Of a stretch of 64,000 nt of DNA, positions 1 through 43,010 are shown in pieces (positions within the stretch are counted from its first letter, which is position 1; every line of letters begins with the position of its first letter). The position numbers and the translations under genes are program-made. Source of the DNA: Thalia democratica (lineage: Eukaryota); contig CBDBBG010000087.1 in the NCBI GenBank assembly GCA_965202585.1, positions 1 through 64,000 on the forward strand, given 5' to 3'. The notes under the pieces are model-generated. The model was not told the DNA's origin. It worked only from the letters and a program-made list of their open reading frames with translations, and made no database searches.

Positions 1-1899
1 AATTCTGATATTTTATTAGTTGCAGTGTACTTCAAACGGCTTTATTTTAGGCTTATTTTAGGCTTTTAGGCTCATTTTGATTGTTCTTTTTGATTTTCAT
101 ATCTCGCCACTTACTCCTTTAACAGCAGACTCAAAATTTTGCAAACACTTTGTTGAGTAAAAAATAAGTTGTGTTGTATATGTTTTGAAACAAGCTTTAT
201 TTTTTTTTTCTATTTTAGTTTTATAATGTTACAATTTAAGATTGATAATTAACAGGAAATTTTATTACGTTTAGGTTTACATGAATTACTGAAGTTTCCA
301 TAAAAAACAACTACTTGCAGTAGTATGAGAAATTTACAGCTTTAGTATAAATAAAATCAGTTTTCAAAGTACATAATCTTTAAAAGTTGTGCTGTATTAT
401 AGTTAACGTTCAGTAACAAATCTTTATTGAAAATAACAATCAGTAAAAATAATTCTTATTTCTAAAATATTTTACTTTGTTGCATTAAATAAAAAGTTTT
501 CATTTTATTAAGAATATTTTTTTTGTGTAATGTTTGTATCATAACATAAAGTTTCAAAAACACTTTTTTTTATTTTAATTGAGTTTTGTTTTTTATACTA
601 TAGTTCACTTTAAAACATTGTTTAAATGATTTAAAATGTTTTAATAGCTTTGAATTTAGTTGTGCAATTAGAAAATTTAGCTATGCACAATTGTTTACTT
701 TAAGCTGCAGAGGGGAGTGATTATTAAATTTATAAAAAAGTCATAAAACTTTATACCAAAATAAAATATTATGCTTCAAACTGGCGTAGAAATTTTTATT
801 TTTATTAAAGTTACTATTGTCGTCGTTAAATAATATTTTAAGGTAGCTGAGCAGTCGTGATTTAATAAAATTTATTTTTGAACTGCTTTAAATTAAAAGC
901 TTTATACTAAGAACATTTATTAATTTTTGAAAACACTGCTTCAGACGAACTAAAATTTATTATCTATTATTTAACTGACAATATTTCAAATACATTGTTT
1001 CTGTTCAGTTAAATTTCTCTCCTATCAAAAAACTATTCACTACAAGTAGCACTCCTTTTTTTCATTATGTTTTAACAAGATAAACTACACAAAACTAACG
1101 TTTTTATCAGTCTTGTTTTAAAAATAATATAATTTTCAATCAAGAAACAAAGTGAAAATACTTAGTCATGTTTCATTTCGACTACTAAAGTCGTACTAAA
1201 GACTATTAAAGTCCTGGACAAGACGTTAAAAGGTATCAAAGTGGTGTGCGACTTGATAACCGAAAGTTTTCTTCGTATACCCGTTCCAAGGATTAAATAT
1301 TTTAAGCGTTTTTTTATCGTTTAATGAACTATAGTATTGAAATAATTTATACTTGCTAGCAAATAAATGGAATTAGAAATACTTTACTCGATGATAAGTG
1401 TTTTTAACTTTAATACTATAAAAACTTAAAAAAACTTTAGCCTGCAGAACACTTTTTCCTTTTAGGCCTGCGGAAAATTTGGATGCCGAGCGCTTATATA
1501 TATCAAAGATTTTATTTGCGAATTAATTTTTTTCATTTTTCTAAGTCTAAAAGTATGTTTTATAAAAAAAATTAAAAAAATTGTTTTATTTACAATTATG
1601 ATCTCGTTTTAAGAAACTAAGTAAGCATTAATCATTAAAGATCTAAAATAACAAATTAATATATACCTTTTATAGGTACCATTTAAAGCCGTATTACTAA
1701 GAAATTTTTTATAGAAAGATTTTTTTGGTCAAAAATAAAATTATCAGAAACACGCACATGTTTATCAGAATCAGCATAAAATTAAAAAATCTGGCAAAAT
1801 CGCCATAAATCAAGAATTTTTCGTTGCCTTTATTCCTTGTGTCAACATATCTCACCACTTTCTATCCCCGTTGACTTGTAAATACCCCCTTATTACGTA

Positions 1900-2330
1900 T
1901 GACAGCCACTTAAAAGATAAAAAGCAGCGACTTTTAACGACATACAAGTCGCACTTCTCTCTTGTCAGCAGAAGCCACACACGACAGTGAAGGAGAGAGG
2001 CGACAGAAGAAGCGGCTTTTGACGTCGTTGGAAGAACTTTGTGACGTCACAAGCAAAAAAGTGGTCGTTTACTTTTTCTTCTTGTTTGAAACTTGTCCTT
2101 ATTGGTTCTTAGCTCCGATCGTAACGAGATTGTATTCGAGATTTCGCCATCAAGTAGTTGGCTTCAATTGCGTTTTGTGACATCACAAACTAAAAAGTCG
2201 TATTTTGCTTTCGTCTTATTGTTCGAAACTCGCGCCTTATTGGTTGTATTTGCTCCGCTCCTTTCGAGATTGTTTTCGAGATTCCACCGTCGAGTAACTG
2301 GCTCAAATAGCGTTTTTGTTTCGTCGCAAT
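1900..2330. promoter_or_regulatory. CRE/CCAAT-rich promoter-like element with an internal 136-bp tandem duplication (single partial copy at 29640-29890)
   Basis: GTGACGTCAC at 2041 and GTGACATCAC at 2177; each unit contains CCTTATTGGTT. Confidence 0.55.
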
Positions 2331-3244
2331 TGTAATGAGTATGAGATCATTGTATTTATGTTTTTCAAAATTTACTATGAAATTTAAATGACAAATACTT
2401 GTAGGAGTTTTTAAGCTATATAAGCGTGTTTTATTAATAATAAAATGAGAACTTTTTTTTAAATATTTCTTGCTTTACATTGTTTCTAAAAATTACGAAC
2501 AACTTTAATCAGTAAATATTATAAATTTAAATCAATTTAAACTGCTTGAAAAACGCTTTATCGAAACACTAAAAGTTGAACAAAGTAACATTACAAACAA
2601 ACTTTCAACAATTGAAGCTATTAGTTTATGACGTATACTTTAAAAAAGTCAAAAAAAAAAAGAACTTAAGATACTCTAAAGACTAAATTGAATACAGGTT
2701 TTAAAAATGTAAATAAATTTTAATTCTAAATTTTAAAAAGCTTAACAGATGTTTATCAGTATAAACGTTTTACGTTAAGGAAAGTAGTATAAGAAAATTA
2801 AGCTTATGAAAGTTACTAGTTACAAATTTGGACAAAAGTTCATAAAATACTTTTTCAAGCTTTGTATTTATTTCTTTTAAATAAAACCACCGGTACTTTT
2901 AACAAGGAAGACTATCCTGGCAACGAAACGAGAAATTACATTAAGTTTCGAACTTGTGATTGATGGGTGAATAAAAACTTGTTTTTAATTTTTTTTTTTA
3001 ATTTTCATTATTACTCAGTTTCTTGTGTTACTTAATTAACATCTGAAATTTGCAACATAATTAGAATCGGCTTACTTCTACCACGGACTTTGTAAGAAGT
3101 TTTTAGAGTTCTTATAACTTGCTGTTGTTTAATAATTTATTTAAAAAGTTATAAAATAGTTTGATACAAAGTTCGTCTCGTTCCGACAACTCACTAAAAC
3201 AATTTAATCTTCTTTAAACTACGGAAGTGATAACTGACAGTTTT

Positions 3245-3375
3245 GTTTCTAAGCAACCATGCCACCTTAGTTGCTACGTGAGATGAGATCCGCGCTTATC
3301 TGCTTAATTTGATTACACATTTACTTGTCCGTTGCTTAGCAACCGTTGCCAGCGAACAAAATGCTTGAAAAGAAA
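3245..3375 (+). promoter_or_regulatory. Module D copy in ghost paralog P1a
   Basis: AAGCAACCATGCCACCTTAGTTGCTACGTGAGA...TTATCTGCTT; X-box GTTGCTTAGCAAC at 3331-3343. Confidence 0.72.
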
Positions 3376-3909
3376 CGGTTTTGTCAGTTTAGCATGTATG
3401 ATGTGTAATTCCACTGGTTACTAGACACTTATTGTTTTTATAAGTACAGAAACATACTTAGTACATCGATCTTGTTTTATTTAGATTTTATATTGTGTTA
3501 GATATGGTAATAAATATGCAATTTAATAGCAGAACATTTTATTAAATTTTAATTTTTGATAAAACCACTTTAGCTTATTAATATGTGCTGTACAGAATGT
3601 ACTGTTTAAGTTTCAGTGGAAGTTATTGATTTGTTTCATAGTTTCTAAATTATCAATTTTATACACATACACTTAAGGGAAATTTAAAAAGTCTGGCTTT
3701 TAATAAAAACATAATCCTTTTAAAGTTATACAACTCTGTGTATTTGTTTACATTAAAAGTTACTAGAGTTTAAAGCTACAGTGATTTAAAATATGAATAT
3801 TTTTTTGGTTACAATAAACGATACGCTAAATTCAAGGAAACTTAGCGGCTAGTTACTTAAGGTTATAGGTCTTTTAAAAGTAAAAACATGATAATTGTTT
3901 GATATTTAC

Positions 3910-4561
3910 CAGTGGCGTCGCGTGGTATTTTTCTTAGGTGGTGCAGAAAAAAAAAACCGAGTTGAAGGTGATCGATTTGCCCCTACTTGAGTTGTCTCTG
4001 CTCGAGTTGCCTTTGCTAGAGTTGCTTCTGCGTGAGTTGCTTCTTCTCGAATTGCCTATTCTCGAGTTGCTTCTTATCGAGTTGCTTCTTCTTGAGTTGC
4101 TTCTTCTCTAGTTGCCTTTTCTCGAGTTGCCTCTTCTCAAGTTGCTTCTGCTCGAGTTGCTTCTTCTCGAGTTGCCTCTGCTTGAAATGTTTTTGCTCGA
4201 GTTGTCTCTGCTTGTATCGCCTGTGCTCTGCTTAGATTTGTTTTCATTTTTTGTTTACAATAACTTGTGGAATGATACTTAAACCTCTATTTTTTCAGGG
4301 AACTTTCAACTTAGCTTACTTACCGCAAGATATTGATTTTGCGGTAATTCTTGAAGAAATTTTGCTGTTTTGAGTTTATTTGCGGCAGTCAGCTAAGAGT
4401 TTGCGGCAGTGAAGTGACCAAAATGGTCGTTTTCTAATTTGGAGTTTAATAAGAGATTTTGTTCTAAAAACTAACGAAAACGTACTAGATACTTAATTTT
4501 TTCTTAAACAATTTTAAGGTGGTGCAATTGCGGCAGTGCAACACCCCACGCGAAGCCAATG
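3910..4561. mobile_element. Non-autonomous hAT-type element (MITE), 652 bp
   Basis: TIRs are CAGTGGCGTCGCGTGG and (reverse complement of the right end) CATTGGCTTCGCGTGG. An 8-bp TSD ATATTTAC lies at 3902-3909 and 4562-4569. The paralogous site near 31670 is empty (single ATAATTAC). Confidence 0.9.
3986..4212. repeat. 15-bp minisatellite (consensus CGAGTTGCTTCTTCT), about 15 units, inside the MITE
   Basis: Directly visible tandem units; they explain the SCFFS-repeat ORF at 4032-4235. Confidence 0.92.
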
Positions 4562-4754
4562 ATATTTACTAAAATAAATTTACATACATTTTTAGCTTTG
4601 ATAAGTATTTGCTTTTATAAGGACTAAATACATAAAATAGGATATTTATACTACTGTTTTAAATGATTTAGAACTGAAATGAAGGCAATAAAGTCAAGTT
4701 AAAGTTAAACACTTTTCCTTCGGAGAGCAACAATTGAATTTTTTAATCTTAGAA

Positions 4755-4900
4755 CCAACTCAATCATTAACAGCTGGTTTCCACGAAAAAAAAAAGATTC
4801 ACTTCCTGTATGACGTAATAAAAGAAACATAGTTTGAATTTAAAATACTTTGGTGACCACTCACTCATCGTTTGTATAAGCCACTAAGCGAGGGTTAATA
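4755..4900 (+). promoter_or_regulatory. Module E: non-coding remnant of exon 2 in P1a (other copies at 31865-32000 and 43545-43690)
   Basis: CTCAATCAT..CAGCTGGTTTCCACG...AGATTCACTTCC..T.TGACGT aligns with coding exon 20417-20251, but the frame is broken. Confidence 0.7.
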
Positions 4901-5271
4901 CTCATAAAAACAAAGTTGTTATTGATTTGTGATTTTTCTAAAAAGTTCAAAGTTTTTAACTTTTTTTTTCAATTTGTATATTTCTTGTTTTCCTTTTAAC
5001 TTTGCAGATGTTCATACTGTTTCAGTAGCTGATTTTAATATTTTTTGATGATTTTATTAAATATTGACTAATTTATTTTTTAGTAACAAAAAAACTAATC
5101 AACAGTATCATTAAAGTAAAAAAACTACTTAAAAGTTTTGTTTAAATATTTTCTTTTTAATTTTAATGTATAATTAATTTTTTGTTTTGTAATTTTAAGT
5201 ATTATAAACTATTGAAAAATCTTCATACGACTTAAAAATTTAATTAAGTAGAATATCTCCCTTCCTGTTTG

Positions 5272-5500
5272 ATTATCAACCTTTCAAAGCTGCTACCCTG
5301 ATCGACAGATTGGGCGAGAAAGAATATCGTTGCCAGGGAAACGCGTCAACGTGATTACGGTGAAAAACTGTGGACAACATCAGGTTTAAAAGGCAATCGA
5401 GTTTCAATCTCGCCCTTTTTGAGTTGCTTCTAAAAGACTTATTTGAATTTGCGAAGCAATGGTAGGTAAATTGAAAAAATAAACGAAGTTTCTTTGCAAA
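5272..5500 (+). promoter_or_regulatory. Module F0 with X-box (other copies at 32338-32572 and 44118-44340; degenerate at 52295-52400)
   Basis: GTTGCCAGGGAAAC at 5329-5342; the P2c copy has GTTTCCATGACAAC at 52333-52346. Confidence 0.65.
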
Positions 5501-6129
5501 CTCATCAGACTTAAGTGTCGAGAAGTTGATCATTTCTTTTTCAGCCTTTTTGCTTGCAAGTATTTTATTATCTGCTACAAGTTATTAAAAAATGCACAAA
5601 CCCTTTTTTCTTCGAGTTTAAGAAAAACTGTAGTTTTGTCGTAAACCTAGTAATCTATTTTTATTTAATAACAGTAAAATAGAACTAAATGAAAAGTAAA
5701 ACACTTAACTATTATATCAATATGAAGTCATTAAAATTTCTCCAACTATTTTTTCAAAGTTTTAAAGGCGGCATAATAAAAAACAATATTTGCAAAACGA
5801 GATTACATAGCATAAAAACACTTAATAACAACTGTCAAAATTTTCATCTTACCACTTTACTTATAAGCAACTTTCAGCTTTTTTTGCTTATTATTTCTGA
5901 GAAATAAAAATACCTAAAAGCCTGTTTATACAAGCAAGCGAATTAATCCACTGAAATGTTGTGAATATAACAGTTATGCTTATAATCGACTCGATGTTCG
6001 ATGTTGTGGTTTCTTACAACTTTAATAATTGTGAGCCACACGAATTTTTCACTTCAGCGGGTACCAACGAAACTACTAATGCTTACTGAAGCTCATATGT
6101 CATGCCTCGTTCCTTGATTTAAAACTTTA

Positions 6130-6620
6130 CTGTCACCTTCTTCTGCTTTTCATTGACAACCTCCGTAGTTGGATTTATCATAAATTTATCGATTGACGAG
6201 AGCTTTCTCGTTTTGTCCAAGTTTCATTTTAAACCTTCGGCATATTGCTTACTTTCACGACGATAATTTTTTACAAAGCTAATGCGAAATCGAAAAAATG
6301 GCTTGCGAGAGTAAAATTTTTCCGATCAAAATGCAGCAGTATAGTAAAAAAAAAACTGTCGAAGATGCTTACTGAGGCTTATTTTTATTTCACAAAAGTC
6401 ACAACTTTTATACGGCTGTTTTCCATTGACAATCTCCGTCGTTGGATATTTTTGAAGTTTATCGATCGACAACAGCTTTCTCGTTTTGTCCAAGTTTCCT
6501 TTTAAACCTTCGGCCTGTCGTTTACTATCACGGCTTTTTGTTTTGGCGAAGCTAATGCGAAGTCGAACGAATGGCTTGCGAGAGTAAAATTTTTCCGATC
6601 AAAATGTAGCAGTGCTGTTT
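6130..6620. repeat. Tandem duplication, period about 273 bp
   Basis: CATTGACAA at 6151 and 6424; TTTCCGATCAAAATG near 6320 and 6592. Unit 3 has one copy near 45890. Confidence 0.85.
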
Positions 6621-6829
6621 AAAGTGCGTTTTGTTGATTTAGAGCCAGTCTGACTAACGTAAAAGCTAAGATTTCTAAATCATAGTCAAAATAATTACAA
6701 AAAAAGTATATATAGTTATGTTCTGTATTAAACATATAAAAGTTTGAAGTCAATTTAAAATCATCTGTAAACTTAAGTGTCTTTAAATTAAAAATTTGAA
6801 TTTAGATTTTAAATATACGTAATCTTAGT

Positions 6830-7060
6830 ACGACAGATTGAACTAGGAAATTTCAATTATGAAAGCCGAAGTCAGATTTCAGACTTCAATTTTCTTCATT
6901 TCAAGTTCTGAGTTTTTAATTTCCAATAATTTAAATGCGACATTTAAAGTTGTGACGTGTAGATTACGACAATTCCAAATATGGGTAATTCAAACTACGC
7001 AAATGTAAATTACGTCAATTCAAATTACAAAAATCGAATTTACGAAAAACTTCGTCAAAT
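6830..7060. repeat. Degenerate short-period repeat, probable transposon remnant (paralog at 46245-46500)
   Basis: Recurrent AATTCAAA(C/T)TACG and CGACAA units, similar to the ends of the 59268-59701 element. Confidence 0.4.
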
Positions 7061-9719
7061 TAAATGTTGGCATCTCATTTTCTTAGTTCAAACAACCAAC
7101 TATAAATATATGTTTGTTCATTTGATATATAACATTTTGTTCAACACAACTGTTTTATTAAAAAATATAAAATGTTTTGTTTGGCCCTTAAATAAAAAAT
7201 AAAACTAGCATTTTTAAATCAAAAAATTTTTTATTGGGATGTCAAATTTAAAAAGCTCTAAAACATTTAAAGCTCATACTATCTATATGTAGTACTTTTA
7301 AAACAAATGCCTAAAGTTTTTAAATATGTACTTGAAAAGTATTGAAATTTGTTTGAAATGAAAAACATTTTAAGTTTATATTGAAAAAAAAATATTAAGA
7401 ACTGTTTGTTTTATTAGCAATTTCAAACACATCACTTTACAGTTTACAGCCTCAAGATAAGACAAACCAAATAAGCCTTAGGTATTATTTATAAAATTTT
7501 TCAAGCATTTTGGTTTTTTTAGTCTGTCTAAGTTTACTGATTGAATACTTGAAATATAACTTAAACAACTATAATTAAGTTAAGAATAAAGTTAATATTT
7601 TAAAGTAAAGTACTTCTACACTTGATTTAAACTTAAAAAATAGTAAGTTTTTTTAAGTTTTAAAATGCTTTGTTTTTTTTTTATGAAGTTAATTTTTTTA
7701 GGAAGTCAATTTATAATTATTTTCCATGTAGATTTTTGTGATGGTTAGCTTTTATTGAATCTTTTTATAAACCTAAAAACGATTTAAAATTTATAAAAAT
7801 ATATATAAACTGACTATCAAAACCAAGGTCACTCAGATAACCAAGTTTAATAGCCTAAATGAAACATAAAAATTCTTCTCTTAAACTATACTTTTTCGTA
7901 ATTTTAGCTTAATTTTGTGCCAAGCAAGCTTTATAAATTGAGCTTAACTTTATTTTCACCATCAGCTCGATTACATCAATCTTGTGTGCGCACATAAAAA
8001 TAAAACCTAACTTATTTACCCATGATTTTAACAATTACCACCTAAAAATTGTGCAAAAATTTTTGCGCTTATTCTACCATATACAATGATTTTCATCAAC
8101 TGTTTAACTTATTATATTAAAACAAACAGACTATCTAAAATAGACTATTAAAAATTAAAAAAACAAATATTTTCTTGTTTCAAATTTTCTAGTAGCATAA
8201 TGATGTTTCAAGTATATTTTTAAAGAACAAATTACTGCAAAATTTAAAACTCAGGTTTTAAACCGATAACTTGTGCAGGTTTTCTTGGATCATAAACTAT
8301 ACAGAAATGTAAGAAGTTTATATAGTTTTAGTAGAAATGAGGCTATTAAAAATAAGCTTTGTTTTTACTTATCAGTTTTTCTGTTAATTTATCAATAAGT
8401 TTAAATAATCGTAAATTACTTAGTTAAACTTATTTGTAAATTTGTTTTTTGTAGAACACTTAAAATCGTACTTAATGTAATTTAAACATACTTGTAAAAC
8501 AAACAAAGAAAACATACGAAAAAATACTACAACGGATGTTTAGAAACTAAATCTCTGAAAAAAAAAAACTGTTTAAAGCTTTATTTGTTAAGAAAAATTC
8601 ACACAGGATATTTTCTGTATAAAATATCACTTACTTTTTACAACAACAAGTAAAAAAAGTTAATATTATACAATTCTCAATTAACGTAATATTACTGAGT
8701 AGTTTTCACAGCAAGCACAAGTCAATATTTCCGTCAGAATTTAAGCTTGAATTACATATATATGATCTCGTTTGCATTTTCTCCTTCGGTGGTCAGTTTG
8801 AAAATGTTGCTTAATGATAAATTTTATAAAATCTAGGATTTTAAGCGTACGTAAATATTTTTCAGAAAGACATTAGAGTGTATAAACGTTATAGATAGGC
8901 AACTTATACATTTAATTCAAAAGTTAATCATTTAACATAAGTATTAGATTTAAACAATAAGTTATTTAAATCGAAAAAATTACAAAAATACTTTATTAAA
9001 GGTCTTAAAACTTAAGAAAAATGTATTTGACAATTTTGGCAGACTTGAATGATTTTCAAAGTTGCCGAAATATCTTAACTATTATTTAATATATTAAACG
9101 ACAAAACCAATTCAATTAAAAAATGCTTGATCCAAGGACCTAGTGTGTAAAAAACTTTCAGTTGACAAGTAGTACACTAAATGGATACAGTTTAGCGTCT
9201 TCTCTAGGACAATTCAATGTTAATGCGCAATTATAGATGTGCACAAATCAAGCGATTATTAAAGATTTATGACTTAAAATCAGAAAGTATAATATACAAA
9301 ACTAATTATGCGTTAAATTATAAAAAAGTTAACATACTTGAATATTTAAGGCTTGTAGAGTAATAAGCTTAGAAGATAAATTGAGTTTATATAAATGTTC
9401 GAACTTAATTGCTTTAAATTTTTGTGACTATTTTTTTACAATCACCATACAATAAACACTTCCAAAATCTATTATTTGAAATATAAGTTAATTAAATCAA
9501 CAAGACTAGTTTATATTAACCAAGTAACTGAAGATTAAAGACAAATACTTAAACTTCTATTATTCTAAAAACATAAGATTTGATTTAAAAAAAGAATACA
9601 ACAAAAAAGCTTTTACAACGAACTCATAAAGACTGTATCGAAAAATGTTGCATTAACAATTCCTGACAAGCAAGTGAACTTCAAAAAACAATTTCAAAAG
9701 TTCAATGAAAATTCAACAT

Positions 9720-10130
9720 TCGAATATCGACGAGCAAAAGGCGGCATTCTGACGAGCTGCGCAATTTTCAACTCAACAATAAAACAACCAGCAATTTTCT
9801 ACGACGAAATTCATTTCCCCCCTCTCAAAGCGACAACACAACAATGAAATCTCGAATTTTCTTTCTCAGTTTCACGAGTAACAAGGCAGCTTGCAAGTGA
9901 ACGAAAAGCGAAAGGGGATAATCTCAGCAAGAAAAGAAGCAGCGAAATTAGGTGAGGGCAAGTTATATGTGAATGATTGGCATCAATTTTGTTTTTTTTT
10001 CTAAAAGCTCCTTATGCCGTTAATTAGAGAGGCAGCGAATATTTGCTGGCAGCGGAGGTTTACTGTTGGCACGATCAACACAAGAAGCTCTAAGGTGTAT
10101 TTCGTGCGCCTTAGTAACCTTTCACCAAAC
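9720..10130 (+). promoter_or_regulatory. Module B, inverted copy (orphan promoter region P2a)
   Basis: Near-identical to the reverse complement of 23830-24050. Confidence 0.75.
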
Positions 10131-16400: not shown

Positions 16401-19400
16401 GATGTCTGATGCTTCTCTTCCAATCCTTGGCAGTCTCCCTCCCGCTTATTGCTTGAAACTCGTTGGGATGCATCCAGCTTTGCTTGCCCCCAAGCTCGTA
16501 TAAAATTGATTTTCCTGTAAAGTTGAGATCCGTAAATTTCAAAATAAATGTAACGTTGAAAAAACTGTTGAGCTGCTTATTTTCTTTGTAATAAAACAAT
16601 TTAAAAAATTATATGAAAAAGTTTATTTTCATTAAATACTCTAAATATAACGTATAAAATATAAAACAAATAATTACAGTAATACCATTTAACTTCGCTC
16701 TGTTTTGTTTTACGTAAAAACGTTTATACAACTAACAGATAGAGACGGCACTCCGTGCAAAAATCGACTTAAACATGAAAAGAAAACTTCTCTAAAAAAT
16801 CACGAGCGGCCGGATTGAATGGAATTTCACGTTCTGGCCGAACAAACGAAAAAAAACGAGGCGATGCATAAGGAATAGTCTGCATTGCGAGAAAGTAATT
16901 AAATTGCAACGAAATAATTTTGTGCGTAAGCAGCTAGTGTGTTTTTTTGCGCTCGTGATTTTGGTTTGCAATATTCTTTGCAGAACTTTAAACTGTGTGT
17001 CAATAACAACATATTTTAAACCTATATTTTACTATATTTTACATAAGCCTATAAATAATTTACTACATATTTTTAAGTTTTGAAGTTCTTTATAGGTTTT
17101 GTTTAAAACTGATATCGACTTTTATTATTTACTGTTCTTGACAACGTTTATATTAAATATATAAAACATCTATTGATACAATGTTTATGCATACTTAAGA
17201 CAAATAGATATAAGAGCTATTACAATGGTTTTGCACAGTGCATTAATAATTTCAAAATATGTTTTATATACATTTAGGTAAACTTTAAAAGTTATTACGC
17301 TTGCGTTTTGTTTGAAAGACAATTTAAGTTATTTGAATAGACTATTTAACATTTTTCTTTTTAATTAAACTGTTTTTACAAACTTTATTAGGACCACAAA
17401 TTCGTAAAATTAAAAATAAAATAAAAAAAGCTTGAATATTGTATACTTCTATAACAAATCAATTTTTTATTTGAACAAAAATATAATTTTGCTCCTATGT
17501 AGCAAAGGAGTTAAATAGGAAAGAACAAAGTATCCTACCTAAATCAATATTTAGCAGCTTTAAACATTGCATATTTATAAAAAAATAGAAAAAAATATCT
17601 AATCCGATTTAGTTTTATTTTTATAAAAATGTACTGTCTTTTAACTTTAAATAATTTTTTCATAACGATAACAATTAATTCCAACTAATTTAGTTTATAG
17701 TTTTTTATTTATTCATGTATGGATTAAGTAAGGAACATAAAAATTCAAAATAATATAAAACCTAAACAAATATTTATTAATATAACCCCACCTTTGCTAC
17801 CCTGGCTGAGTCTTGCGATGTAGAGGAGGGCATTGTTGTCGCCACAAGTCACCTCCAAAAACTCCTCTCCTCCTTCGTCCTTCTTAACTTCCACCTCCGA
17901 GCTGCTCACGTGACCTTTCGGCAGGTTCACCGTCCACCTGCAACCCTCCGTTGCGACGTGGTGATGGCTGGTTGCCCCTAACAACCGGTTTTGAAGCCTC
18001 ATTTTGCTCACTGAACTTTCCATCAAATCTGCGGATGTTTTTAAATTGCGTTTTAGGAGATTTCAATTTTAAGTTTTAATAAGTTTATACATTAAAATTT
18101 TATCGTTTTAGAAATAAATGTATGTATTATGTCTGATCAAAATCGTCTTTGTTAAGCTTTTTAGCCTGTTTTGCTTAAGAGTTCTATGATCAGACTCACT
18201 TGTAATAATTTAAGAAATGAAAATCTTAAACTTTTAAATTTTTGATTGAGCACCCAATAGTAATTACATGTTTTCAAATACTCACCGACGACAGTTGCCT
18301 TTCAGTTTCAATTTACTTTCTGAGAAAAAAAAAACAAAATGAAAAGGCAAACACTCGCAAGTTGCGATTTGAAAGGAAGCTTGAACGGAAAGGAAGCTCG
18401 TAAATCGATAAATTAGACACGGAAGACAGCCAATGGTGACCTCTAGCAACGCTTCTATCGACAAAGGTTGCCATTGGCAACGCAGAAAAGACGAGAAGAA
18501 AAAACCGAAGAGATAAGCTGCAATGACGTGACAAAGGATTAAGAGCGGTGATAAAAAGTAGAAGCGACGGCAGCAGATAATCTCGACGCGGAAGGAAGCG
18601 AATAAACCTAACCAGTTTTCAATGTTTGTATTTCGTAGCTGCCTGTAGGAACAAAATCGAATTTTTGCGGTGTCAACGCGGGTGCGAAATACAAACATTG
18701 ACGGCATTTTGCGAAAAAAAAGAGAACGCCGCTCGACGCTTCGTGCTAATTAGAAAGTTTTTGGCCGCCGCTAGCACGCCAAACAACGTTCGCTGTGACG
18801 TCATAATGGTCTCTGTGTCAAATGTGATCGCTCTCGTCACACAACAGGCTTTCCAGTTTTCTTTGTTACAAAACGCCGCCCGACAGCTGAGGATCGAACG
18901 ACGAGAAGCTTTTATTCATTATTTATCGCCGCGCCAAATTTATATTCGCTTCTTTTCGCTGCGGCCGTTTGAAACTCTCTCTTTATTGAGACGTGTGAGG
19001 CGAACAATGCGAGAATAATTACCGCTGAAATTCGCTAAATGATTGAACGGCAGATAAGAAGCCAACTTAGCTCGCTGCGCCACTCAGAGCTTTTAGCCAA
19101 TTTCAGAGGCGTGTTCCGTGATTTAACGCTTTTCAAAAACACTTCGCGCGAGACAAGTCGACATTTCAGTGTTTTAAAATCGCGCGAGGTGCAGCTTAAT
19201 TAGTAAGGCAGAAAGTAAAAGGTTTTGCGAAATCTTTTAGCAAAGAAAAAACTTGGAATTTTTTCATGCTTGATTTTGCCTACCCGCGAACCTTTCTGTC
19301 ATTCATTTTTTGTTGCTAGCTTTTTATTTTAGATATATAAAAACAAAAACTACAGTAAAGTTTTAATAGAAGAGTAAAAATTTTTGATTAAACTAATAAA

Positions 19401-22125
19401 GTTGATCAAGCTTACATTTTTGTATGAAAATCAAAGAAAACCATAAAAAAATACAAGAAAAGCGCTTCAATAATCCTTAAACGAAAATATGCTGGAAGTA
19501 AGCTCTTCTGTATTAACCTGTGCCCGCATATCGCGAGCAGCTTTTTGTTGAAAACCGCAAACAACAAAACAACAAGAAATCTCTTCTCTGCTTCTCGCCT
19601 GAAATAATTAATCACATCAGCGTGGCGCAGTGTCGGATTTTACTGTGCCGGGGAAGATTTGAACAAAGAGGAAGGTTAGCGCTAATCCGCGGTGTCAGCC
19701 TTTGGCATCGGAGTTACTGAAATCTCCTTTGAGCCGAGCACCTAAGTACGCACGAGTTTGTACGACCGACAAGTTGAATTTAAACTTGGCTAAAATGTTC
19801 AAAGCTTGTGCGTCTGACAAAACTTTATGAAAGTTGTCTAATGTAAGTTAAAAATATTTCAATTGTTAAACTTTGTTTGCACATTTATGCACTTGATATC
19901 ATTTTGTTTAGTAGTTAATGCTTTTAAACAAGTTCAAACATTAAGAATTAAAACAATCGTTATTTTCTATTAACCTTTAAAAAACTGAAGTAAACTTAAT
20001 AGCCTTTTAACTTGTTTCAAATAAGCTTTCTTTAAATGCAGTTTGTTACGTTTTTCTTTACGAAGTCTGAAACGATTATTTTACTTCTAACAAATGAAAA
20101 TGACATACGTTTATATATAAAGAAAACACTATATAGATAAAACTGATTTAACTTAATAAAAAAAAGCTTAATACAGATGAGAACTTTCAAATTCAAATCG
20201 ATTTTTTTCATCATATGCACACAACACTGTTTGGTTCAACAAAAACTAACTGTTGTTGTTAGGAGTAACGACTCTTTTTCCGTTGCTGCTAGTTACAACC
20301 GGAGGCTGCTGACTTTCAGCAACGGAAGTCGTGGATGACAGCTCTGGCAATGACGTCATAGCGGAAGTTGATCTCTGCTGCGTGGAAACCAGCTGAAGAT
20401 GATTGAGCTCGTTGTTGCTGTGTAAAAGAAGAGAAATAGAAAATATTATAAAAAAAGGAATTATTTAGAAGCAGTACTAAGGTTAAAAAATGTTTTATTT
20501 AATTGTTCATAAATTTCAAAACTTTCATTTGGAACCAAAATATTTTTTATTAAGTAAAAAAAAAATATACTTCAAATAATCTCAAAAACTAATGTTAACT
20601 ACTTTTCTTTAGTTATAAATTTATTAGTTCAAATTTTTACCGTGAAAATATTGTGTTGTCGAACATTGGCATATTAGGAAAAGGCAAAATACTTTCTTGT
20701 TTTTTATTCAAGTTCATCAGATTTAGAACTTGTAACCTGAAAGCATTAGTTTTTAAACAACAAGAAACTCCATTTTAGAAATTTAGTATACTTTCATAAA
20801 AATTTTAATCTGTTCGTTGGAAAGTTTCAAAAAGTATAAAAATTTATAGTTTTATGTTTTAAAGATGTTTTAGCCAGCAAAACTTTAAAATACAATAACC
20901 GACATCAAAAAAAAATACACATATCGAACAAAAATGAAAGTTTTTGACAATAGTTGAATACATAAATTAAACGAAAAATATTTTTTTTTGCAAACAGCGA
21001 ATATATCGATGGTACAAGCTCTTTGTTGTTACAACTAAACAAGTCAGCAGTTGCCATAGCAACCAGCCACACACGCGGCAGTAAAAACACATCCGAGGAG
21101 CCCACCACGTCACCATGTAAACAACCTCCTTAGCAACGGTTGCAAAGTTGCGAGTTGCAATGAAGCAGATAAACACTTTTGGTCTCTCGCATGGTAACCA
21201 AGGTGGCATGGTTGCTTGGCAACCGGGTCGTCCCGCTTTCAGCACCTCCGCACTTTTAATTAATCAGCCTCGACGAAAATCAGCGACGTCTGCGAAGAAG
21301 GCTTTAAGTTTCCTTCAGACGCGGTAAAGTAAACCATATGTCTAAAATTTCAAGTTTTTTCTCAAGAAAAAGCTTTTTTGATGTAAATGTTTTCGAGAAT
21401 TAGTTTTCTATAGTCTATACCGGTGAATTTTGAAAGACACAACTTTATCAGTTGGTGTTACTTCGAAGTTAATCAGTTTATTATTGTTTAAAAAAAGTTC
21501 AAGTATATTTACTAGTCCTTTATATTATCTTTCAAAAAAATGTTGTGCCCTATTGAGTCAAATAATTTAAATTTTTTCCAGTTCTGTAGTAAAATTTATG
21601 TTTGTTAATAAGTTCATATGTTTGTCTTTTGACCTGTAATATCAGAGTATAAATATATTTAAAGAACTACCACACAAAAAAGCTAAACAATAAAACTTGT
21701 TTAAAAAAATCTAAACACTAAAATTAGTACAATTTTTTGAAGTTTGAAAAATACAAAAAACTTAACTTTGATAGTCATTTTCAACAGTTGATAAAAAGAC
21801 ATTTTGTTTTTATTTTACTTTAGTGTTTAATAGTTTATTTAAATACTCACCAGTTAACCTGGTTCGGGCTTCCGAATCGTTGCGGGTCGAACCCGGAAAT
21901 TTCATCACCTTTTTGCGGCTTAGCCCCATTCAACCCACCGAAATTAGAGGAAGTGTGCGGAAATCCCCCAGGAAAGGGGTTACCAGGCAACATGGCTGCC
22001 GGGTTGTTAAGCATCCACATACTGGCAAGGTCGGATTGAGAAAAAATGTCCCCGAACTCGGCACCTGATTGGCTTAAAATTGTCGATAAATCAGTAGAAA
22101 TACCCGGAACTGCTGAAGAACCCAT
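12760..22125 (-). CDS. SAMD11: Gene A: SAND-domain + SAM-domain protein, SAMD11/SAMD7-like, 13 coding exons, 720 aa
   Basis: Exons (minus): 22125-21851, 20417-20251, 18028-17792, 16514-16291, 15985-15750, 15523-15403, 15323-15257, 15114-15066, 14341-14138, 13848-13771, 13553-13500, 13430-13172, 12951-12760. All introns are GT-AG and phase-compatible. The exons sum to 2163 nt (720 aa + TAA). The SAND segment LEVTCGDNNALLYIARLSQGSKG...PNEFQAISGRETAKDWKRSIRHHGKSLKALMSK matches the SAMD11-type SAND as I recall it. A SAM domain lies at the C-terminus. The symbol means SAMD11-like; orthology is untested. Confidence 0.88.
16291..18028 (-). CDS. SAMD11: SAND-domain exons of gene A (18028-17792, 16514-16291)
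   Basis: KDWK SAND signature followed by a Cys-rich CECEWC tail; phase-1 intron in SKG|KSI. Confidence 0.95.
18280..19250 (-). promoter_or_regulatory. Module G: CpG-rich internal promoter/enhancer candidate in gene A intron 2 (homologues at 53480-53890, 5930-6620, 45650-46090)
   Basis: Shared block CCATTG...CTCCGT...AATTTATCGATT(G/T)ACGAG; X-box-like GTTGCCATTGGCAAC at 18467-18481; CRE at 18796-18803. Confidence 0.6.
21040..21300 (-). promoter_or_regulatory. Module D, X-box-rich element in gene A intron 1
   Basis: GTTGCCATAGCAAC (21050-21063) and GTTGCTTGGCAAC (21211-21223). The core AAGCAACCATGCCACCTTGGTT is shared with other copies. Confidence 0.72.
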
Positions 22126-29276: not shown

Positions 29277-31004
29277 ATATATATCAAAGTTTTTATTTGC
29301 AAATTATTTTAACTTTATTTAACTTTTCCAAGCCTGAAAGTAATATTTAAAAAAGATTTTTTTAATTTTCAATCATCAATTTTGATCTCGTTTTTACAAA
29401 CTAACTATACATTAATCAATAAAGATCTAAAATAAAAAATTACAATATACTTTTTATATGTTTCATTTAATACCATTTTACTAAAAGTTTTACAAGGAAA
29501 TTTGTTAGACTGATTTTTTAATCCAAAAAAAAAATCAGAAACTCGCACATGTGTATTAGAATCAGTATATACCAAATTTTGGAAAATGGCTAAAAATTAA
29601 GAATTTTTTGTTGCCGTTATTCCTTGTGCCAACATATCTCATCACTTTCAATCCCCGTTGACTTCTAAATGCCCCCTTATTACGCATGGTAGCCACTTAA
29701 AATATAAAAAGCAGCTACTTTTGAAGACACACAAGTTGCACTTTTCTCTCGTCAGCAGAAGCCACTCACGCCAGTGCAGGAGAAAGGCGACAGAAGAAGC
29801 GGCTTCTGACGTCAGTGGCAAAATGTGTGACGTCACAAACCAAAAATCGTCGTTTACTTTCTTCTTATTTTTCAAAACTCGCGTCCTGATATATAAATGA
29901 GTTTTAAATGAGTTTATCAATAATAAAATGAGAATTTTTCTAAAATTTTTCTTGCTTTTTCATAGTTTCTAAAAATTACGAACAATTCTAATAAGTAAAT
30001 GTTATAAATTTAAATCAATTTTAACTACTTGAAACGAGTTATCGAAACACTAAAAGTTGAAAAGAGTACCATTACAAAAAAAAAAGAACTTAAGACACTC
30101 TTAGGACTAAATTGAATACAGGTTTTAAAAATGTAAATGAATTTTAACTAAAACTCTTTAAAAGCTTAACAGATGTTTATCATCATAAAAGTTTTACGAC
30201 AAGGAAAGTAGTAAATGAAAAACTAAACTTATGAAAGTTACTGTTTAGAAATTTGGACAAAAGTTCATAAAATACCTATTTGAATTTTGTATATATATTT
30301 CTTTTAAATAAAAGCTACTGGTACTTTTTCATTAAGGAAGATTATCCTAGCAACGAAACGAGAAACTACATAAAGTTTCGAATTTGTGATTGATGGGTGC
30401 ATGAAAAAATTGTTTTCAAATTTTCTTTCAACTTTCGTTATAACTCAGTTTCTTGTGTTACTTAATTAACACCAGAAATTAGCAACATAATTAAAATCAG
30501 CTTACTTCTACCACGGAATTTGTAAGAAGTTTTTAGAATTTTTATAACTTGCTGTTCAGTTATATTAGCTGTTTGTAATGCGAAATGTGGTATCTAGTTT
30601 GTAATTACCTTTTTTATAATGTATCATCGTTCAATGTGTTTTAAATAAGGAGCTGTTTTTTAGAATTTAAAAAAAATAAGTGCAACACTTTTAGTCTAGC
30701 CTTTTAAGTTTTTTTCAAGGAACATCAAAGTTCTGTTAATCTAGAGTTTTTTGAAAGTTTACTAGCGTTTAAACCAGAAAAAATGCAAAATACTAAAACA
30801 TTTCGGCAAAAACATTAACATGTTATTTTGAATTAATTCTAATGACTTCATTTGAATATTGAATAACTTTATATTAGTTAACTATAAATTTTGTATAAAA
30901 TTTATTTAAAAAGTTATAAAAAAGTTTGATACAAAATTTGTCACATACCGACAACTCACTAAAACGATTTAATCTTCTCTAAACTACGGAAGTGATGACT
31001 GACA

Positions 31005-31135
31005 ACCGTGTTGCTAAGCAACCATGCCACCTTGGTTGCTACGTGAGATGCGATCTGCGCTTATCGGCTTAATTTGATTACAGATTTGCTCGTCCGTTGC
31101 TTAGTAACCATTGCCAGCGAACAAGTTGTTTGAAC
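31005..31135 (+). promoter_or_regulatory. Module D copy in P1b
   Basis: Matches 3245-3375; GTTGCTAAGCAAC at 31010-31022. Confidence 0.72.
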
Positions 31136-32572
31136 AGAGACATTTTTGTCAGTTTAGCTTGTATGATGTGTAATTTCACTTGTTACTAGACACTTATCTT
31201 GTTTATTAGTCTCAACTAAAACATACTTGGTACATCGATCTTGTTTTATTTAGTTTTTATAATGTTTTGTATATGATAATGAATATGCAATTTAGTAGCA
31301 AAACATATTATTAAATTTTATTTTTCTATAAAACCACTATTGCGCATTGATATGTGCTGTATAGAATGTACTATTTAAGTTTAAGTGGAAATTATTAATT
31401 TTCTTAATTGGTAATAACTTATCAATTTTATACACATACACTTAAGGAAAATTTCAAAAGTCTGGCTTATAATAAAAATATAATACTTTTAAAGTTATAC
31501 AATGCTGTGTATTTGTTTACATAAAAATATACTAGAGTTTAAAGCTACAGTGATTTAAAATATAAATATTTTTTGATAACAATAAACGATACACTAAATT
31601 CAAGTAAACTTAGCGGCTAGTTACTAAAGGTTATAGGTTTTTTAAAAGTAAAAACATGATAGTTGTTTGATAATTACTAAAATAAATTAACATACATTTT
31701 TAGTTATGATCAAGTATTTGTTTTTATAAGGACTAAATACATAAAATAAGATATTTATACTACTGTTTTAAATGATATAGAACTGAAATGTAGGCAATAA
31801 AGTCAAGTAGTTTAAGTAAAACACTTTTACTTTGGAGGGCAACAAAAGAATTTTTGAATTTTATAAACAACTCAATCATCAAAAGCTGGTTTCCACGAAA
31901 CAAAGATTCACTTCCTGTGTGACGTAATAAAAGAAACATAGTTTGAATCACATATACTTTGGTGGCCACCCATCGTATAAGCCACTAAGCGAGAGTCAAT
32001 ACTCGTAACAACAAAGTTGTTATTGATTTTTGATTTTCTAACGAGTTTAAAGTTTTTTAATTTATTTCTTTCCAATTCGAATATTTCTTGTTTTCCTTTT
32101 AACTTTGCAGATACCCGTGTTGTATTTATTGCTAATTTTGTTATTTTTTGATAAGTTATTAAATACTGACTAGTTTATGTTTTAGTGTTACAAAACCAAT
32201 CAACAGTGTCATAAAACTAAAAAAAAACTATTTATATAATTTATTTTTTGTTTTATAATCTTAATTATTATAAATTATCGAAAAGTCTACATACGACTTA
32301 AAACTTTTATAAAATAGAATATATCCCTTCCTATTTGCTCATCAACCTTTCAAAGCTGCTACTCTGATCGACAGATTGGGCGAGAAAGAATATCGTTGCC
32401 AGGGAAACGCGTCAACGTGTTACGGTGAAAATTTGCTTATAAACTCCCCAACATCAGATTAAAAAGGCAATCGAGTTTCAATCTCGCCCTTTTTGAGTTG
32501 CTTCTAAAAGACTTATTTGAATTTGCGAAGCAATGGTAAGTAAATTGAAAAATAAACAAAGTTTCTTTGCAA

Positions 32573-40450: not shown

Positions 40451-42884
40451 TAAGACAAATATACATTTGAATGTTAGCATATTTGTTCATTTAAAAAGAA
40501 AACTGTTAAAGACGAATTAAATTTTTTTTTTATCCTTAAACCAAAAAAAAAAACATGCTTATAGTACGCAAGCATTTTGTTTACACCGTTTATAAAAATT
40601 TAAATTATCTTTATAAAGTATAGTTACTGAAAAGTTTCTACTTAATTTTTCAAACAATAACATAAAACAAAATTTTACACTTACTCTGTAACTGTAGTTT
40701 CTACAGTAGTAAATGCTAGAAAATAAAACATAAAATCTATTATATCGTATTTCACTTACCACACTCCAAATGTATTATTAATGTTCAGTCAAATTTCCTT
40801 ATTTGATTTGGCTTGACACTTTTATATGTTGTTGCTGCACTAAAACTTTAGTACTTAATAACATATCTACAGATATAAATCAGTTTAAATTATTAACAAC
40901 GTTCTTTACAAACAAAGAATTTTTTAACAGAATAAAACTGTAAGGAATCTTTTAGTAATAGTTTTTGTCTTTAATCGACACTTGGTAAAAAATTATAAAT
41001 TAAAAAGAATTTGATCATACAAAAAAAAAGTAAGTAGAATACTGGCATTAAAATTTGTAAAAACAACCTAGTTTATTAATTTAAAAGTCAAAAATTGTCA
41101 ATAAAAGAGTTTTGTGTAAAATATTAGAACTATAAAAATAAAAAAGGAGTTTGTTTAACTTACGAAATTTATTGTTTAGAAACTTCGACGAGGAAATTTT
41201 TTTATTAACTCCTTGAATTGTGTTTTTTTTTTATCTCAGGTAAAAGCATTGCTGTTTTTTAGTAACAATGAAGATTGTCATAGCAACGAAACGAGAAACA
41301 AAATTAGGTTGAATTTTGAGTCTATGATTGATGAGTGCACAAAAAACTTGTTTTGAATTTTGTTTTATTTTTCCTTCTAACTCAGTTTCTTATATTACTT
41401 TTTAAAAATATCATACTAGAAATGGATATTTGTGGTCAAATCGCTTGTTATTTTTTTTAGCCTCTTAAGAAACTCATAAGATTATTGATAACTTTAAAAT
41501 ACTTTACTTTTCGTCCGTCTTACCGTCTTTTCACGTAACTTTTTGTTTTAATTTGTAATATTTCAATGTATCATTTTTTAACGTGATCATTAATAAAGCA
41601 TTTCAGTTTAGAATTTTAAAAACATACTTAATGCTTAGTTGAAAGTAGTTTTTCATTAAAGCCTTATTTTTTATTTCAAAGTTTTAACTTATTTAAACAT
41701 TATTACCAGAAAATAAAGAAAATAGTAACTAAATACATTCCTGCAAAGACATTAGAACATTGCTTGCAAAAAAAGTATATAAATTTCTATATAATAAGTA
41801 GACATAACATTAAACAGATTTCACAAATTTCCATTAAAATAAGCTTCTAAATTTTTCTTTGAAATTAATTTTATATCCAATAACTAGTTTATGCTTTTTT
41901 AGAGCTTTTTTATTTCTTTTTAAACAAAAATCAATAATTTGTTAGTCTTTTTCTTTAAAAATGAAGTCCTATGAACTTTAAAGATTAACTTTACTTTCAC
42001 CAGAGTTAAATTACACAGTCACCATTTTTTATTAATTCAGTTTGTTTTGATGAGTACAAGTGAGTAAAGTATCAAATAGTTTAAACGTCATACGATTCAA
42101 ATAATAAAATAAAAATCTTTATTTTGATATTAAATAATTGACTATTATAATAAAATAGTTTTAAAAAATGTAAATTTCATTTATAGTTTAAACTTCTCTG
42201 TGTATTCAATTTCAATTTAACTTCAAGGTGTTTAGACAACTTAAAATCCAAAAAAAAAAAAGCTTTTACCTTTTACAAATAATATGCTACGCGCAAAACA
42301 AGTTTAAAGGCAATTAATTTACAACAACACCTTTTTGTTTATACCAGCAGCTTAAAAAACTCGGCTAGTTTTATTAAAAATTTCAAACAGTTACAAAGAC
42401 TTCAATTTTTTTTTAAAGGTTTTCAAATAAAAAATACTTAATATTTTATTTCAGCAGACTATAAATATTAGAATTAACAATTGTAAAGCAAAAAATAACA
42501 ACATATCCAATTATATTTAAACAGCAAATAGGTAATATTTAAATAGTATTTAAGTGTTAAAGTATTCTATATACTATTGAAACTATTAATAAATGTCAAT
42601 CAGTTAGTTCTTTCAAAAAAAAAAATTGTTATAGTTGTAATTTTTTTTAACTCTTTTAATTTAGTACGCTTTATTGTTCCATAAAAGAATTAAAGAATAC
42701 TTTAGCACAAAATATTTTACTCTAATTTTTTTTTAAATACTAATTTGACTTAATAGTTATATATATATATATATATATATACAATCTTTAAGCTAACATA
42801 TCCTTTTCAGACGAATCTCGCTGCCTAACTTTGCATCGTTCCGCCATCTAACTATAACCTACAAACTGATGAAGAACTGACAAA

Positions 42885-43010
42885 CTTAATGCTAAGCAAC
42901 CATTTCACCTCGGTACATGAGATTCGATCTGCGCTTACTGGCTTAGTTTGATTACAGATTTGCTTTTCCACTGCTTAGCAACCGTTGCCAGCGAACAAGT
43001 TGTTTGAAAA
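42885..43010 (+). promoter_or_regulatory. Module D copy in P1c
   Basis: Matches 3245-3375. Confidence 0.68.

What the first reader, a model, noticed from the sequence alone, without database searches (positions are those of the whole stretch)
2900..6620. Ghost paralog: ordered regulatory modules retained in three copies with no visible coding exons
Modules D (3245), E (4755), F0 (5272) and G (5930-6620) occur on the plus strand in the same order as in intron 1, exon 2 and intron 2 of the SAND-SAM gene. No exon 1 or SAND exon could be found around them. The set recurs at 31005-32572 and 42885-46090, with the modules clearly better conserved than the AT-rich spacers. Inference: an ancient duplicate lost its protein but its cis-elements were kept and re-amplified. 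They may act as a bank of shadow enhancers for the surviving genes or drive a non-coding transcript.
Basis: partly seen in the sequence, partly recalled or inferred. Interest (0 to 1): 0.8.

Follow-up and report, generated by a model that had tools for sequence, protein, structure and literature searches.

The report
Decayed gene fragment keeping regulatory-looking blocks
The stretch is an old, non-coding leftover of the front half of a SAND-SAM gene; it sits in the spacer between two such genes, was copied passively along with them at least ten times, and keeps a few short blocks that look like gene switches, a function that remains untested.

Summary
The observation largely holds. Window 2900-6620 carries blocks D, E and G. 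They match, on the same strand and in the same order, intron 1, exon 2 and intron 2 of the live SAND-SAM genes. Profile searches in both directions confirm this.

- **E is a frame-broken relic of exon 2.** Only its first ~70 nt are well kept; they contain E-box, ETS and CRE-like words.
- **F0 has no counterpart in the gene.** A further collinear block, F, exists in copy 3 but is missing from copies 1 and 2.
- **No other exon relic was found:** no exon 1, SAND or SAM.

All relic copies split from all gene copies by one long branch, so the relic arose once. It was not re-amplified on its own. It lies in the spacer of a roughly 26-kb gene-bearing repeat unit and multiplied with it. At least 10 sets exist, all inside the gene cluster.

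Across five old lineages, D, E and the G core are better conserved than spacers. GC content does not explain this, because G/C sites decay faster in spacers. Young copies show weak or no constraint. No RNA or chromatin data were available.

Verdict: a real relic, plausibly regulatory, and a new example of a known kind. Other notes of this scan flagged similar cassettes on other DNA of this genome.

The parts
1..9870 (+). Spacer copy X1. It lies between an upstream gene copy (off the window) and a truncated first-exon block B(+).
   Evidence: Collinear with 26006-32572 and 39443-48251. Also collinear with spacers on contig C1.
3211..3500 (+). Module D. Holds two X-box-like palindromes, an ETS-like CGGAAGTG and a GATA-like TTATC. 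Counterpart of gene intron-1 element D' (21109-21256, minus strand).
   Evidence: Mean identity 0.77 across five old lineages, core 0.84, against spacer 0.59. Alignment with D'. nhmmer E 1e-6 to 1e-13.
3910..4559 (.). MITE insertion specific to copy 1. It has ~14-nt inverted ends, an 8-10 bp target duplication (TGATATTTAC) and an internal 15-bp tandem array.
   Evidence: Dozens of copies at 81-91% genome-wide. Depth ~1e5 in reads. Empty site in copy 2. Tandem array.
4750..4915 (+). Module E, a decayed relic of coding exon 2 with its acceptor AG. The 5' ~70 nt (CAGCTG, ACTTCC, TGACGT(A/C)A) are kept and the rest is decayed.
   Evidence: Alignment. tblastn matches exon-2 residues 2-21 in every relic copy. 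Relic-to-gene identity is 0.71 in the 5' part and 0.42 in the 3' part; consensus comparison p=4e-4.
5250..5520 (+). Module F0. Specific to the spacer, with no counterpart in the gene, and weakly conserved. Its 3' end in copy 1 is a deletion junction.
5930..6620 (+). Module G, holding a 273-bp tandem duplication (6143-6340 and 6416-6613). The core around TTTATCGATTGACGAG matches gene element G' (18279-18421, minus strand). A GT is kept where G' has a GTGAGT donor.
9871..9995 (+). Truncated first-exon block B(+) that follows X1. No plus-strand gene follows it.
30967..32572 (+). Copy 2 of D (30967-31185), E (31814-32001) and F0 (32316-32572). Cut by the N gap at 32573-32672, which was not filled.
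42875..46065 (+). Copy 3, upstream of the plus-strand gene B. D 42875-43049, E 43543-43678, F0 44097-44359, F 44592-44810, G 45815-46065.
18279..21256 (-). Parent-type segment in live gene A. D' 21109-21256, exon 2 20241-20430, F' 19403-19677, G' 18279-18421.

Best explanation
**What is shown**
- Window 3200-6620, with its copies at 30967-32572 and 42875-46065 and at least seven more on other contigs, is an old non-coding relic. It derives from the intron 1 - exon 2 - intron 2 segment of a SAND-SAM gene.
- It lies, always in the same orientation, in the ~10-kb spacer upstream of a first-exon block B. The spacer separates head-to-head SAND-SAM genes.
- The relic arose once, before the family expanded. 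It was then multiplied passively each time the ~26-kb unit (gene + spacer + B) was duplicated or inverted.
- Its exon-2 copy is frame-broken.

**What survives, in order**
1. D, an intronic element rich in RFX-type X-boxes, with ETS-like and GATA-like words.
2. The first ~70 nt of exon 2, carrying E-box, ETS and CRE-like words.
3. F, an intronic conserved block, lost again in the lineage of copies 1 and 2.
4. G, the core of an element that in live genes sits just upstream of the first SAND exon and ends in a splice donor.

**What is inferred**
These cores were kept because they bind the same transcription factors as their counterparts in the live genes. They would then act as extra, redundant cis-regulatory modules for the flanking genes. 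G may also start a transcript.
For: **Array structure**
- Map of the array and its units.
- All module copies lie inside the gene cluster, so they are not dispersed repeats.

**Homology to the gene**
- Profile matches are collinear and on the same strand in both directions: gene profile against spacers and spacer profile against genes.
- Hand-checked alignments of D, E, F and G.
- The relic-versus-gene split has support 1.0 and a branch of 0.56-0.59 substitutions per site.
- All relic lineages share frame-breaking deletions in E.

**Conservation**
- Peaks across five old lineages: D 0.77 (core 0.84), E 0.79 and G 0.73, against spacer 0.59.
- G/C sites are identical at 0.66 in modules and 0.37 in spacers.
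- Among windows with GC of 0.3 or more, modules exceed spacers (Mann-Whitney p<1e-4). There is no correlation between conservation and GC.
- Decay within the former exon 2 is uneven. The consensus is 78% identical to the gene in the 5' part and 50% in the 3' part (p=4e-4), although both halves are 0.87-0.88 identical among live genes.

**Motifs**
- The window holds 19 X-box consensus sites against 0.63 +/- 0.74 in dinucleotide shuffles. They fall in D, D' and G' and in exons of the family, exon 2 included.
Against: **No functional data**
- No RNA-seq run holds the stretch or the gene.
- There are no chromatin data.
- No cross-species comparison was possible.

**Weak recent constraint**
- Copy 1 against its C1 relative: modules differ by 9.0% and spacers by 11.7%.
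- Copy 3 against its C1 relative: modules 10.7%, spacers 8.9%.

**Modest excess over gene introns**
- Intron background of the adjacent genes in the same units is 0.66-0.78 identical, mean 0.70.
- The modules as a whole (0.73) are therefore only slightly above that benchmark. Only the cores of D and E clearly exceed it.

**Sequence exchange between copies**
- G of one otherwise old lineage is 91% identical to copy 1. This inflates apparent conservation.

**Unverified motif names**
- The transcription-factor names rest on remembered consensus sequences, not on a tested motif library.
Confidence: 0.6

Rival explanations
1. Neutral relic. The blocks are only the slowest-decaying or most recently homogenised parts of a dead gene fragment. 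Gene conversion and unequal crossing-over between the many copies, plus easier alignment of less AT-rich sequence, create the look of conservation. The blocks have no function.
For: - Young pairs show little or no deficit of substitutions in modules.
- Modules overall (0.73) are close to the intron background of neighbouring genes (0.70).
- There is clear mosaicism. G in C1:80095361-80095812 is 91% identical to copy 1 in an otherwise ~60% identical lineage.
- A 125-nt patch of B at 9871-9995 is 93% identical to the A-type B.
Against: - Conversion among relic copies cannot explain the similarity kept towards the gene counterparts across a branch of 0.56-0.59 substitutions per site.
- It also cannot explain the sharp difference between the two halves of the former exon 2.
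- G/C sites are the fastest-decaying sites in spacers (identity 0.37), yet they are kept at 0.66 in modules.
- GC-matched spacer windows are less conserved than modules.
Confidence: 0.25
2. Transcribed unit rather than enhancer bank. G, and perhaps D or E, acts as an alternative distal promoter and first exon for the downstream plus-strand gene, or for a non-coding RNA. The relic exon-2 acceptor and the GT retained in G would serve as splice sites.
For: - G' in live genes ends in a GTGAGT donor, and the aligned GT is invariant in all five relic sequences aligned.
- The acceptor AG before E is kept in most relic lineages.
- The relic always lies upstream of B, in the same orientation as B.
Against: - No RNA run was available to show any transcript.
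- There is no Rfam match.
- Several relic copies, including copy 1 and at least three on C1 (80.07, 80.13 and 80.17 Mb), precede only a truncated B with no gene behind it. What follows copy 2 is hidden by the N gap.
- The donor-like ATGGTAGGTAAA in F0 of copy 1 is a lineage-specific deletion junction, not a conserved site.
Confidence: 0.12
3. The blocks are fragments of a mobile element that inserted independently into the spacer and into the gene introns.
For: - The stretch does contain one true mobile element, the MITE at 3910-4559.
- Part of the upstream spacer (about 1194-1333) has scattered weak copies.
Against: - D, E, F0, F and G have copies only inside the SAND-SAM cluster.
- D, E, F and G keep the same order, strand and spacing as in the gene.
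- E includes a coding exon with its acceptor.
Confidence: 0.03

Closest known systems
Exonic remnants / regulatory coding exons that survive loss of a duplicated gene (teleost whole-genome duplication; PMC2831330, Nucleic Acids Res 2009)
   Same: A duplicated gene copy has lost its coding function, but an exon piece stays conserved as non-coding DNA next to surviving genes. This implies that a regulatory signal overlapped the coding sequence. Here the 5' ~70 nt of exon 2 survive while the rest of the exon has decayed.
   Different: The origin here is a local duplication inside a tandem and inverted gene array, not a whole-genome duplication. The relic also keeps intronic elements in order and has been multiplied at least 10 times with the array. 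There is no reporter or cross-species evidence here.
Exonic enhancers (dual-use coding exons; PMC13216554, Nat Commun 2026)
   Same: Live exon 2 carries conserved E-box, ETS and CRE-like words and an X-box consensus. This is the same part that is retained in the non-coding relic.
   Different: Enhancer activity has not been measured for this exon or for its relic.
Shadow (redundant) enhancers (recalled from the Drosophila literature, not read here)
   Same: Several similar modules with the same motif content lie near the same genes.
   Different: Shadow enhancers are defined by overlapping activity in reporter assays. Nothing of the kind is shown here, and the redundancy arises from segmental duplication.
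Unprocessed (duplicated) pseudogene fragment in a tandem gene array evolving by unequal crossing-over and gene conversion
   Same: There is collinear homology to the parent gene including introns, frame-breaking indels, and copy number tied to the array unit. Identity patterns are mosaic.
   Different: Decay is strongly uneven. Short cores shared with the live genes persist across a long branch, while all other exons and intron sequence have become unrecognisable.

Membership tests
Gene relic (unprocessed pseudogene fragment) of the SAND-SAM gene | Collinear, same-strand homology to the parent gene, including intron sequence | tested here: met
   D, E, F and G match gene profile positions 4358-4505, 5161-5279, 5986-6295 and 6953-7429 in order. 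The reciprocal search agrees.
Gene relic (unprocessed pseudogene fragment) of the SAND-SAM gene | Loss of the reading frame | tested here: met
   All relic copies share a 4-nt and an 8-nt deletion in the exon-2 relic, plus stop codons. Live copies differ only by in-frame changes, for example a 9-nt deletion.
Gene relic (unprocessed pseudogene fragment) of the SAND-SAM gene | Remains of the other exons, which would show that a whole gene was once present | tested here: not met
   No exon 1, SAND1, SAND2 or SAM relic was found at E<=10 by nhmmer or tblastn. A partial duplication of ~3 kb is therefore equally possible.
Conserved non-coding element under purifying selection | Slower evolution than neighbouring neutral DNA after allowing for composition | tested here: inconclusive
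   Met for D, E and the G core across old lineages. Weak or absent in young pairs. Only a small excess over the neighbouring gene introns. Conversion between copies confounds the test.
Conserved non-coding element under purifying selection | Conservation at the orthologous locus in other species | not testable with these tools
   No related eukaryote genomes can be searched. Contigs labelled as a second organism cover too little of the stretch.
Enhancer / shadow enhancer | Open chromatin, factor occupancy or reporter activity | not testable with these tools
   No such data are reachable. The only support is motif content: 19 X-box sites against 0.63 expected.
Transposable element | Dispersed copies outside the locus, with terminal repeats and a target-site duplication | tested here: not met
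   D, E, F0, F and G have copies only in the cluster. The feature is met only for the insert at 3910-4559.
Known non-coding RNA gene | Match to a curated RNA family, or RNA reads | tested here: not met
   No Rfam match at gathering score and no tRNA. No RNA run holds the stretch, which does not prove that it is silent.

The most novel reading that the evidence does not exclude
A dual-use coding exon and its neighbouring intronic X-box element outlived the death of their own gene copy. They were then carried along to at least ten places in a fast-evolving SAND-SAM array. There they would act as a bank of RFX/ETS/CREB-responsive redundant enhancers, or as alternative promoters through G, that tune the dosage of the surviving paralogs.
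Probability: 0.3. Interest if true: 0.6.

Novelty: new member of a known kind. Interest (0 to 1): 0.4.

Why it matters
If the cores are active, this locus would be a natural experiment that separates the regulatory signal of a coding exon from its coding role. It would do so in an invertebrate tandem array rather than after a vertebrate whole-genome duplication. It offers at least ten replicated copies of different ages, some next to intact genes and some next to truncated ones. That would make it possible to ask directly how long orphaned cis-elements persist, and whether they buffer expression in rapidly duplicating gene families. If the cores are inactive, the locus is an ordinary decaying fragment. 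It would then be a caution that module-like conservation in multi-copy arrays can arise from uneven decay and gene conversion.

Tried and rejected
- **RNA evidence.** Two run searches, one with the stretch and one with gene A exons, found only three DNA-like runs and no RNA.
- **Laying those runs.** This confirmed the sequence and the high copy number of the MITE. It gave too little cover from the second organism label for an orthologous rate test.
- **Known RNA genes.** The Rfam and tRNA scans were empty.
- **Gene model from homologs.** A whole-library protein search with the SAND exon found no full-length close homolog. The best hit was a 141-aa fragment. Exon borders therefore rest on comparison of paralogs.
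- **More of the cluster.** Four or more relic sets at 79.88-80.07 Mb were seen only as hit coordinates.
- **First alignment run.** One MAFFT run timed out and was repeated with a faster mode.
- **GC content as the cause of module conservation.** Rejected.
- **Mobile-element origin of the modules.** Rejected.
- **F0 as a first exon with an ATG and a donor.** Rejected, because that site is a deletion junction specific to the copy-1 lineage.
- **The N gap at 32573-32672.** It was left as it is. Copy 2 is described only up to the gap.
Full report
**Setting**

The window is the first 64 kb of an unplaced scaffold (C96) of an 802-Mb genome; the window itself averages about 29% GC. Pfam finds SAND-domain halves at 17745-18026 and 16279-16599 on the minus strand, and again at 54370-54597 and 55439-55681 on the plus strand. 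A SAM start lies at 13163-13441 on the minus strand.

A self-comparison gives this map:

| Window place | Feature |
|---|---|
| 1-~9870 | Spacer X1 |
| 9871-9995 (+) | Truncated first-exon block B |
| ~12400-25900 (-) | Gene A |
| 26006-32572 | Spacer X2 |
| 32573-32672 | N gap |
| 32673-39428 (-) | 5' part of a gene copy |
| 39443-48251 | Spacer X3 |
| 48252-48468 (+) | Block B |
| from 49943 (+) | Gene B |

The finding therefore lies in the spacer between head-to-head genes. The repeated unit is gene + spacer + B. A collinear array at 82-92% identity lies on contig C1 near 80.13-80.20 Mb. I did not use it to fill the gap.

**Checking the observation**

- **Recurrence.** D (3200-3420), E (4700-4900), F0 (5250-5520) and G (5930-6620) recur at 30967-31185, 31814-32001 and 32316-32572, where copy 2 is cut by the gap. 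They recur again at 42875-43049, 43543-43678, 44097-44359 and 45815-46065.
- **Copy number.** Genome-wide, each module has 9-14 matches. Almost all lie in the SAND-SAM cluster: C1 79.88-80.21 and 82.05-82.07 Mb, one gene copy on C2, and scaffolds C96 and C1567. The cluster holds about 14 closely related SAND exons and about 20 B blocks. Every relic set lies upstream of a B in the same orientation. There are thus at least ten sets, not three, and they are not dispersed repeats.
- **Foreign insert.** The only mobile element in the stretch is 3910-4559, a MITE. It has imperfect inverted ends, an 8-10 bp target duplication and a 15-bp tandem array. Copy 2 has an empty site. The element has dozens of copies elsewhere and a read depth near 1e5.

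**Relation to the gene**

BLAST gave short inverted matches to gene A for D and E, each about 65 nt at 74-75% identity with E ~2e-6, and a weak one for G. I then built a profile from seven A-type genes and searched ten spacers with it. All significant hits were on the gene strand and in gene order:

| Module | Gene profile positions | Gene A, window | E-value |
|---|---|---|---|
| D | 4358-4505 | 21256-21109 | 1e-6 to 1e-13 |
| E | 5161-5279 | 20481-20350 | down to 2e-12 |
| F | 5986-6295 | 19677-19403 | down to 3e-41 |
| G | 6953-7429 | core 18421-18279 | weak, but recurring at the same coordinates |

The reverse search, a spacer profile against genes, gave the same picture. It included single alignments spanning D to E and F to G.

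- F is present in copy 3 (44592-44810) and three other lineages. It is deleted in the lineage of copies 1 and 2.
- F0 has no counterpart in the gene.
- No trace of exon 1, either SAND exon or the SAM exon was found by nhmmer or tblastn at E<=10. The exception is an unrelated SAM fragment in one C1 spacer.

**What E is**

The alignment shows that E is the whole of exon 2 with its acceptor AG.

- Live copies keep an open frame and differ by in-frame changes.
- All relic copies share a 4-nt and an 8-nt deletion and contain stop codons.
- The first ~70 nt carry CAGCTG, ACTTCC and TGACGT(A/C)A. There the relic-to-gene identity is 0.71, or 78% for the consensus.
- In the remaining ~105 columns the identity is 0.42, or 50% for the consensus. 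The difference has p=4e-4.
- Both halves are 0.87-0.88 identical among live genes.

**D and G**

D aligns with the intronic D' over two X-box-like palindromes, a CGGAAGTG word and a TTATC word.

G aligns with G' around TTTATCGATTGACGAG. G' ends in GTGAGT in most live genes, and the aligned GT is kept in all five relic sequences aligned.

The window holds 19 matches to the X-box consensus, against 0.63 +/- 0.74 in shuffles. They lie in D, D' and G' and in several exons of the family. The factor names are my reading of remembered consensus sequences, not a tested assignment.

**History**

Trees of D and of E separate all relic copies from all gene copies by one branch of 0.56-0.59 substitutions per site, with support 1.0. 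F is less divergent between the two classes. The relic therefore arose once, before both classes diversified. Its present copy number comes from duplication and inversion of the whole unit, not from separate re-amplification.

**Is conservation more than composition?**

Across five old spacer lineages, pairwise identity is 0.51-0.66. The background median is 0.44, and there is no correlation with GC (rho -0.07).

| Class | Aligned-only identity |
|---|---|
| D | 0.77 |
| E | 0.79 |
| G | 0.73 |
| F0 | 0.64 |
| Spacers | 0.59 |
| G/C sites in modules | 0.66 |
| G/C sites in spacers | 0.37 |

Among windows with GC of 0.3 or more, modules exceed spacers (p<1e-4).

Three cautions apply:
1. Introns of the adjacent genes in the same units are 0.66-0.78 identical, mean 0.70. 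Only the cores of D and E clearly exceed that benchmark.
2. Young pairs show weak or no deficit in modules: 9.0% against 11.7%, 9.8% against 14.0% and 5.5% against 10.9%, but 10.7% against 8.9% for copy 3 and its C1 relative.
3. Copies exchange sequence. G in one old lineage is 91% identical to copy 1.

**Function**

No RNA run holds the stretch or the gene exons. There is no Rfam or tRNA match. The three available runs behave like low-coverage DNA. Regulatory or promoter activity is therefore inference from uneven decay and motif content.

**Comparison with what is known**

The closest described case is the set of exonic remnants that survive loss of one paralog after the teleost genome duplication. 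Those were read as regulatory coding exons (PMC2831330). Recent work on exonic enhancers (PMC13216554) fits the idea of a dual-use exon 2. The differences here are the local tandem origin, the retention of ordered intronic elements, the passive multiplication and the lack of any functional test.

**Verdict**

The relic is real and its anatomy is now defined. A cis-regulatory role for D, the E core, F and G is plausible, at about even odds. The 're-amplified bank' wording overstates what the sequence shows.

Noticed in passing
window 3910-4559: MITE insertion private to copy 1. It has ~14-nt inverted ends, a target duplication TGATATTTAC and an internal array of about 22 units of 15 bp. There are dozens of copies at 81-91% on all large contigs.
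   Followed up: yes
window 6143-6340 and 6416-6613: A 273-bp tandem duplication (84% identity) inside module G. Both units hold the conserved G core.
   Followed up: partly
window-wide, e.g. 18436, 18467, 20282, 21050, 21211, 21979, 22873, 22950, 34882, 50074, 53803: X-box (RFX-type) consensus sites are about 30-fold enriched: 19 against 0.63 in shuffles. They also occur inside coding exons of the SAND-SAM genes.
   Followed up: partly
window 9871-9995 versus 23901-24021: The truncated B(+) after copy 1 is 93% identical to the A-type B of gene A. The surrounding 9543-10755 is only 77% like the B-type region 47924-49171. This looks like a short conversion patch.
   Followed up: no
C1:80130001-80230000 (loci L011-L020) versus the window: A collinear array at 82-92% identity. 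Scaffold C96 may be a very divergent haplotype or a recent block duplicate of that region, so genome-wide copy counts may double-count.
   Followed up: partly
window 16300-16518 and 17787-17942, and their paralogs: SAND exons are 89-99% identical in DNA among copies whose introns are only 66-78% identical. This fits strong selection, gene conversion centred on the exons, or both.
   Followed up: no
window 691-870 (also 26830-27068, 28128-28372, 40089-40306): An AT-rich (13-28% GC) but well conserved block in the upstream part of the spacer. It is tandemly doubled in copy 2. Its nature is unknown.
   Followed up: no
window 20620-20770 (minus) and 51401-51493 (plus): A conserved block between D' and exon 2, with an open frame shared by genes A and B at 45% amino-acid identity. 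It may be an additional small exon, in which case 'exon 2' is misnumbered.
   Followed up: no
window 18279-18421 (minus): Element G', ~340 nt upstream of the first SAND exon, ends in a consensus GTGAGT donor in most live copies. It could be an internal alternative first exon.
   Followed up: partly
C1:80123549-80123641 (locus L026): A 93-nt SAM-exon fragment (93% identity) sits inside a spacer just upstream of its D module. This is a local rearrangement.
   Followed up: no
window 58326-58550 (minus): An ORF with a match to the calsyntenin C-terminal family, right at Pfam's cut-off (27 bits; E 2.7e-6). It is probably an exon of a neighbouring unrelated gene.
   Followed up: no
window 49943-54458 (gene B) and C1:80134000-80145200: B-type genes lack the intronic D' and have only a weak exon-2 match. 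They carry the relic with D and E upstream.
   Followed up: partly
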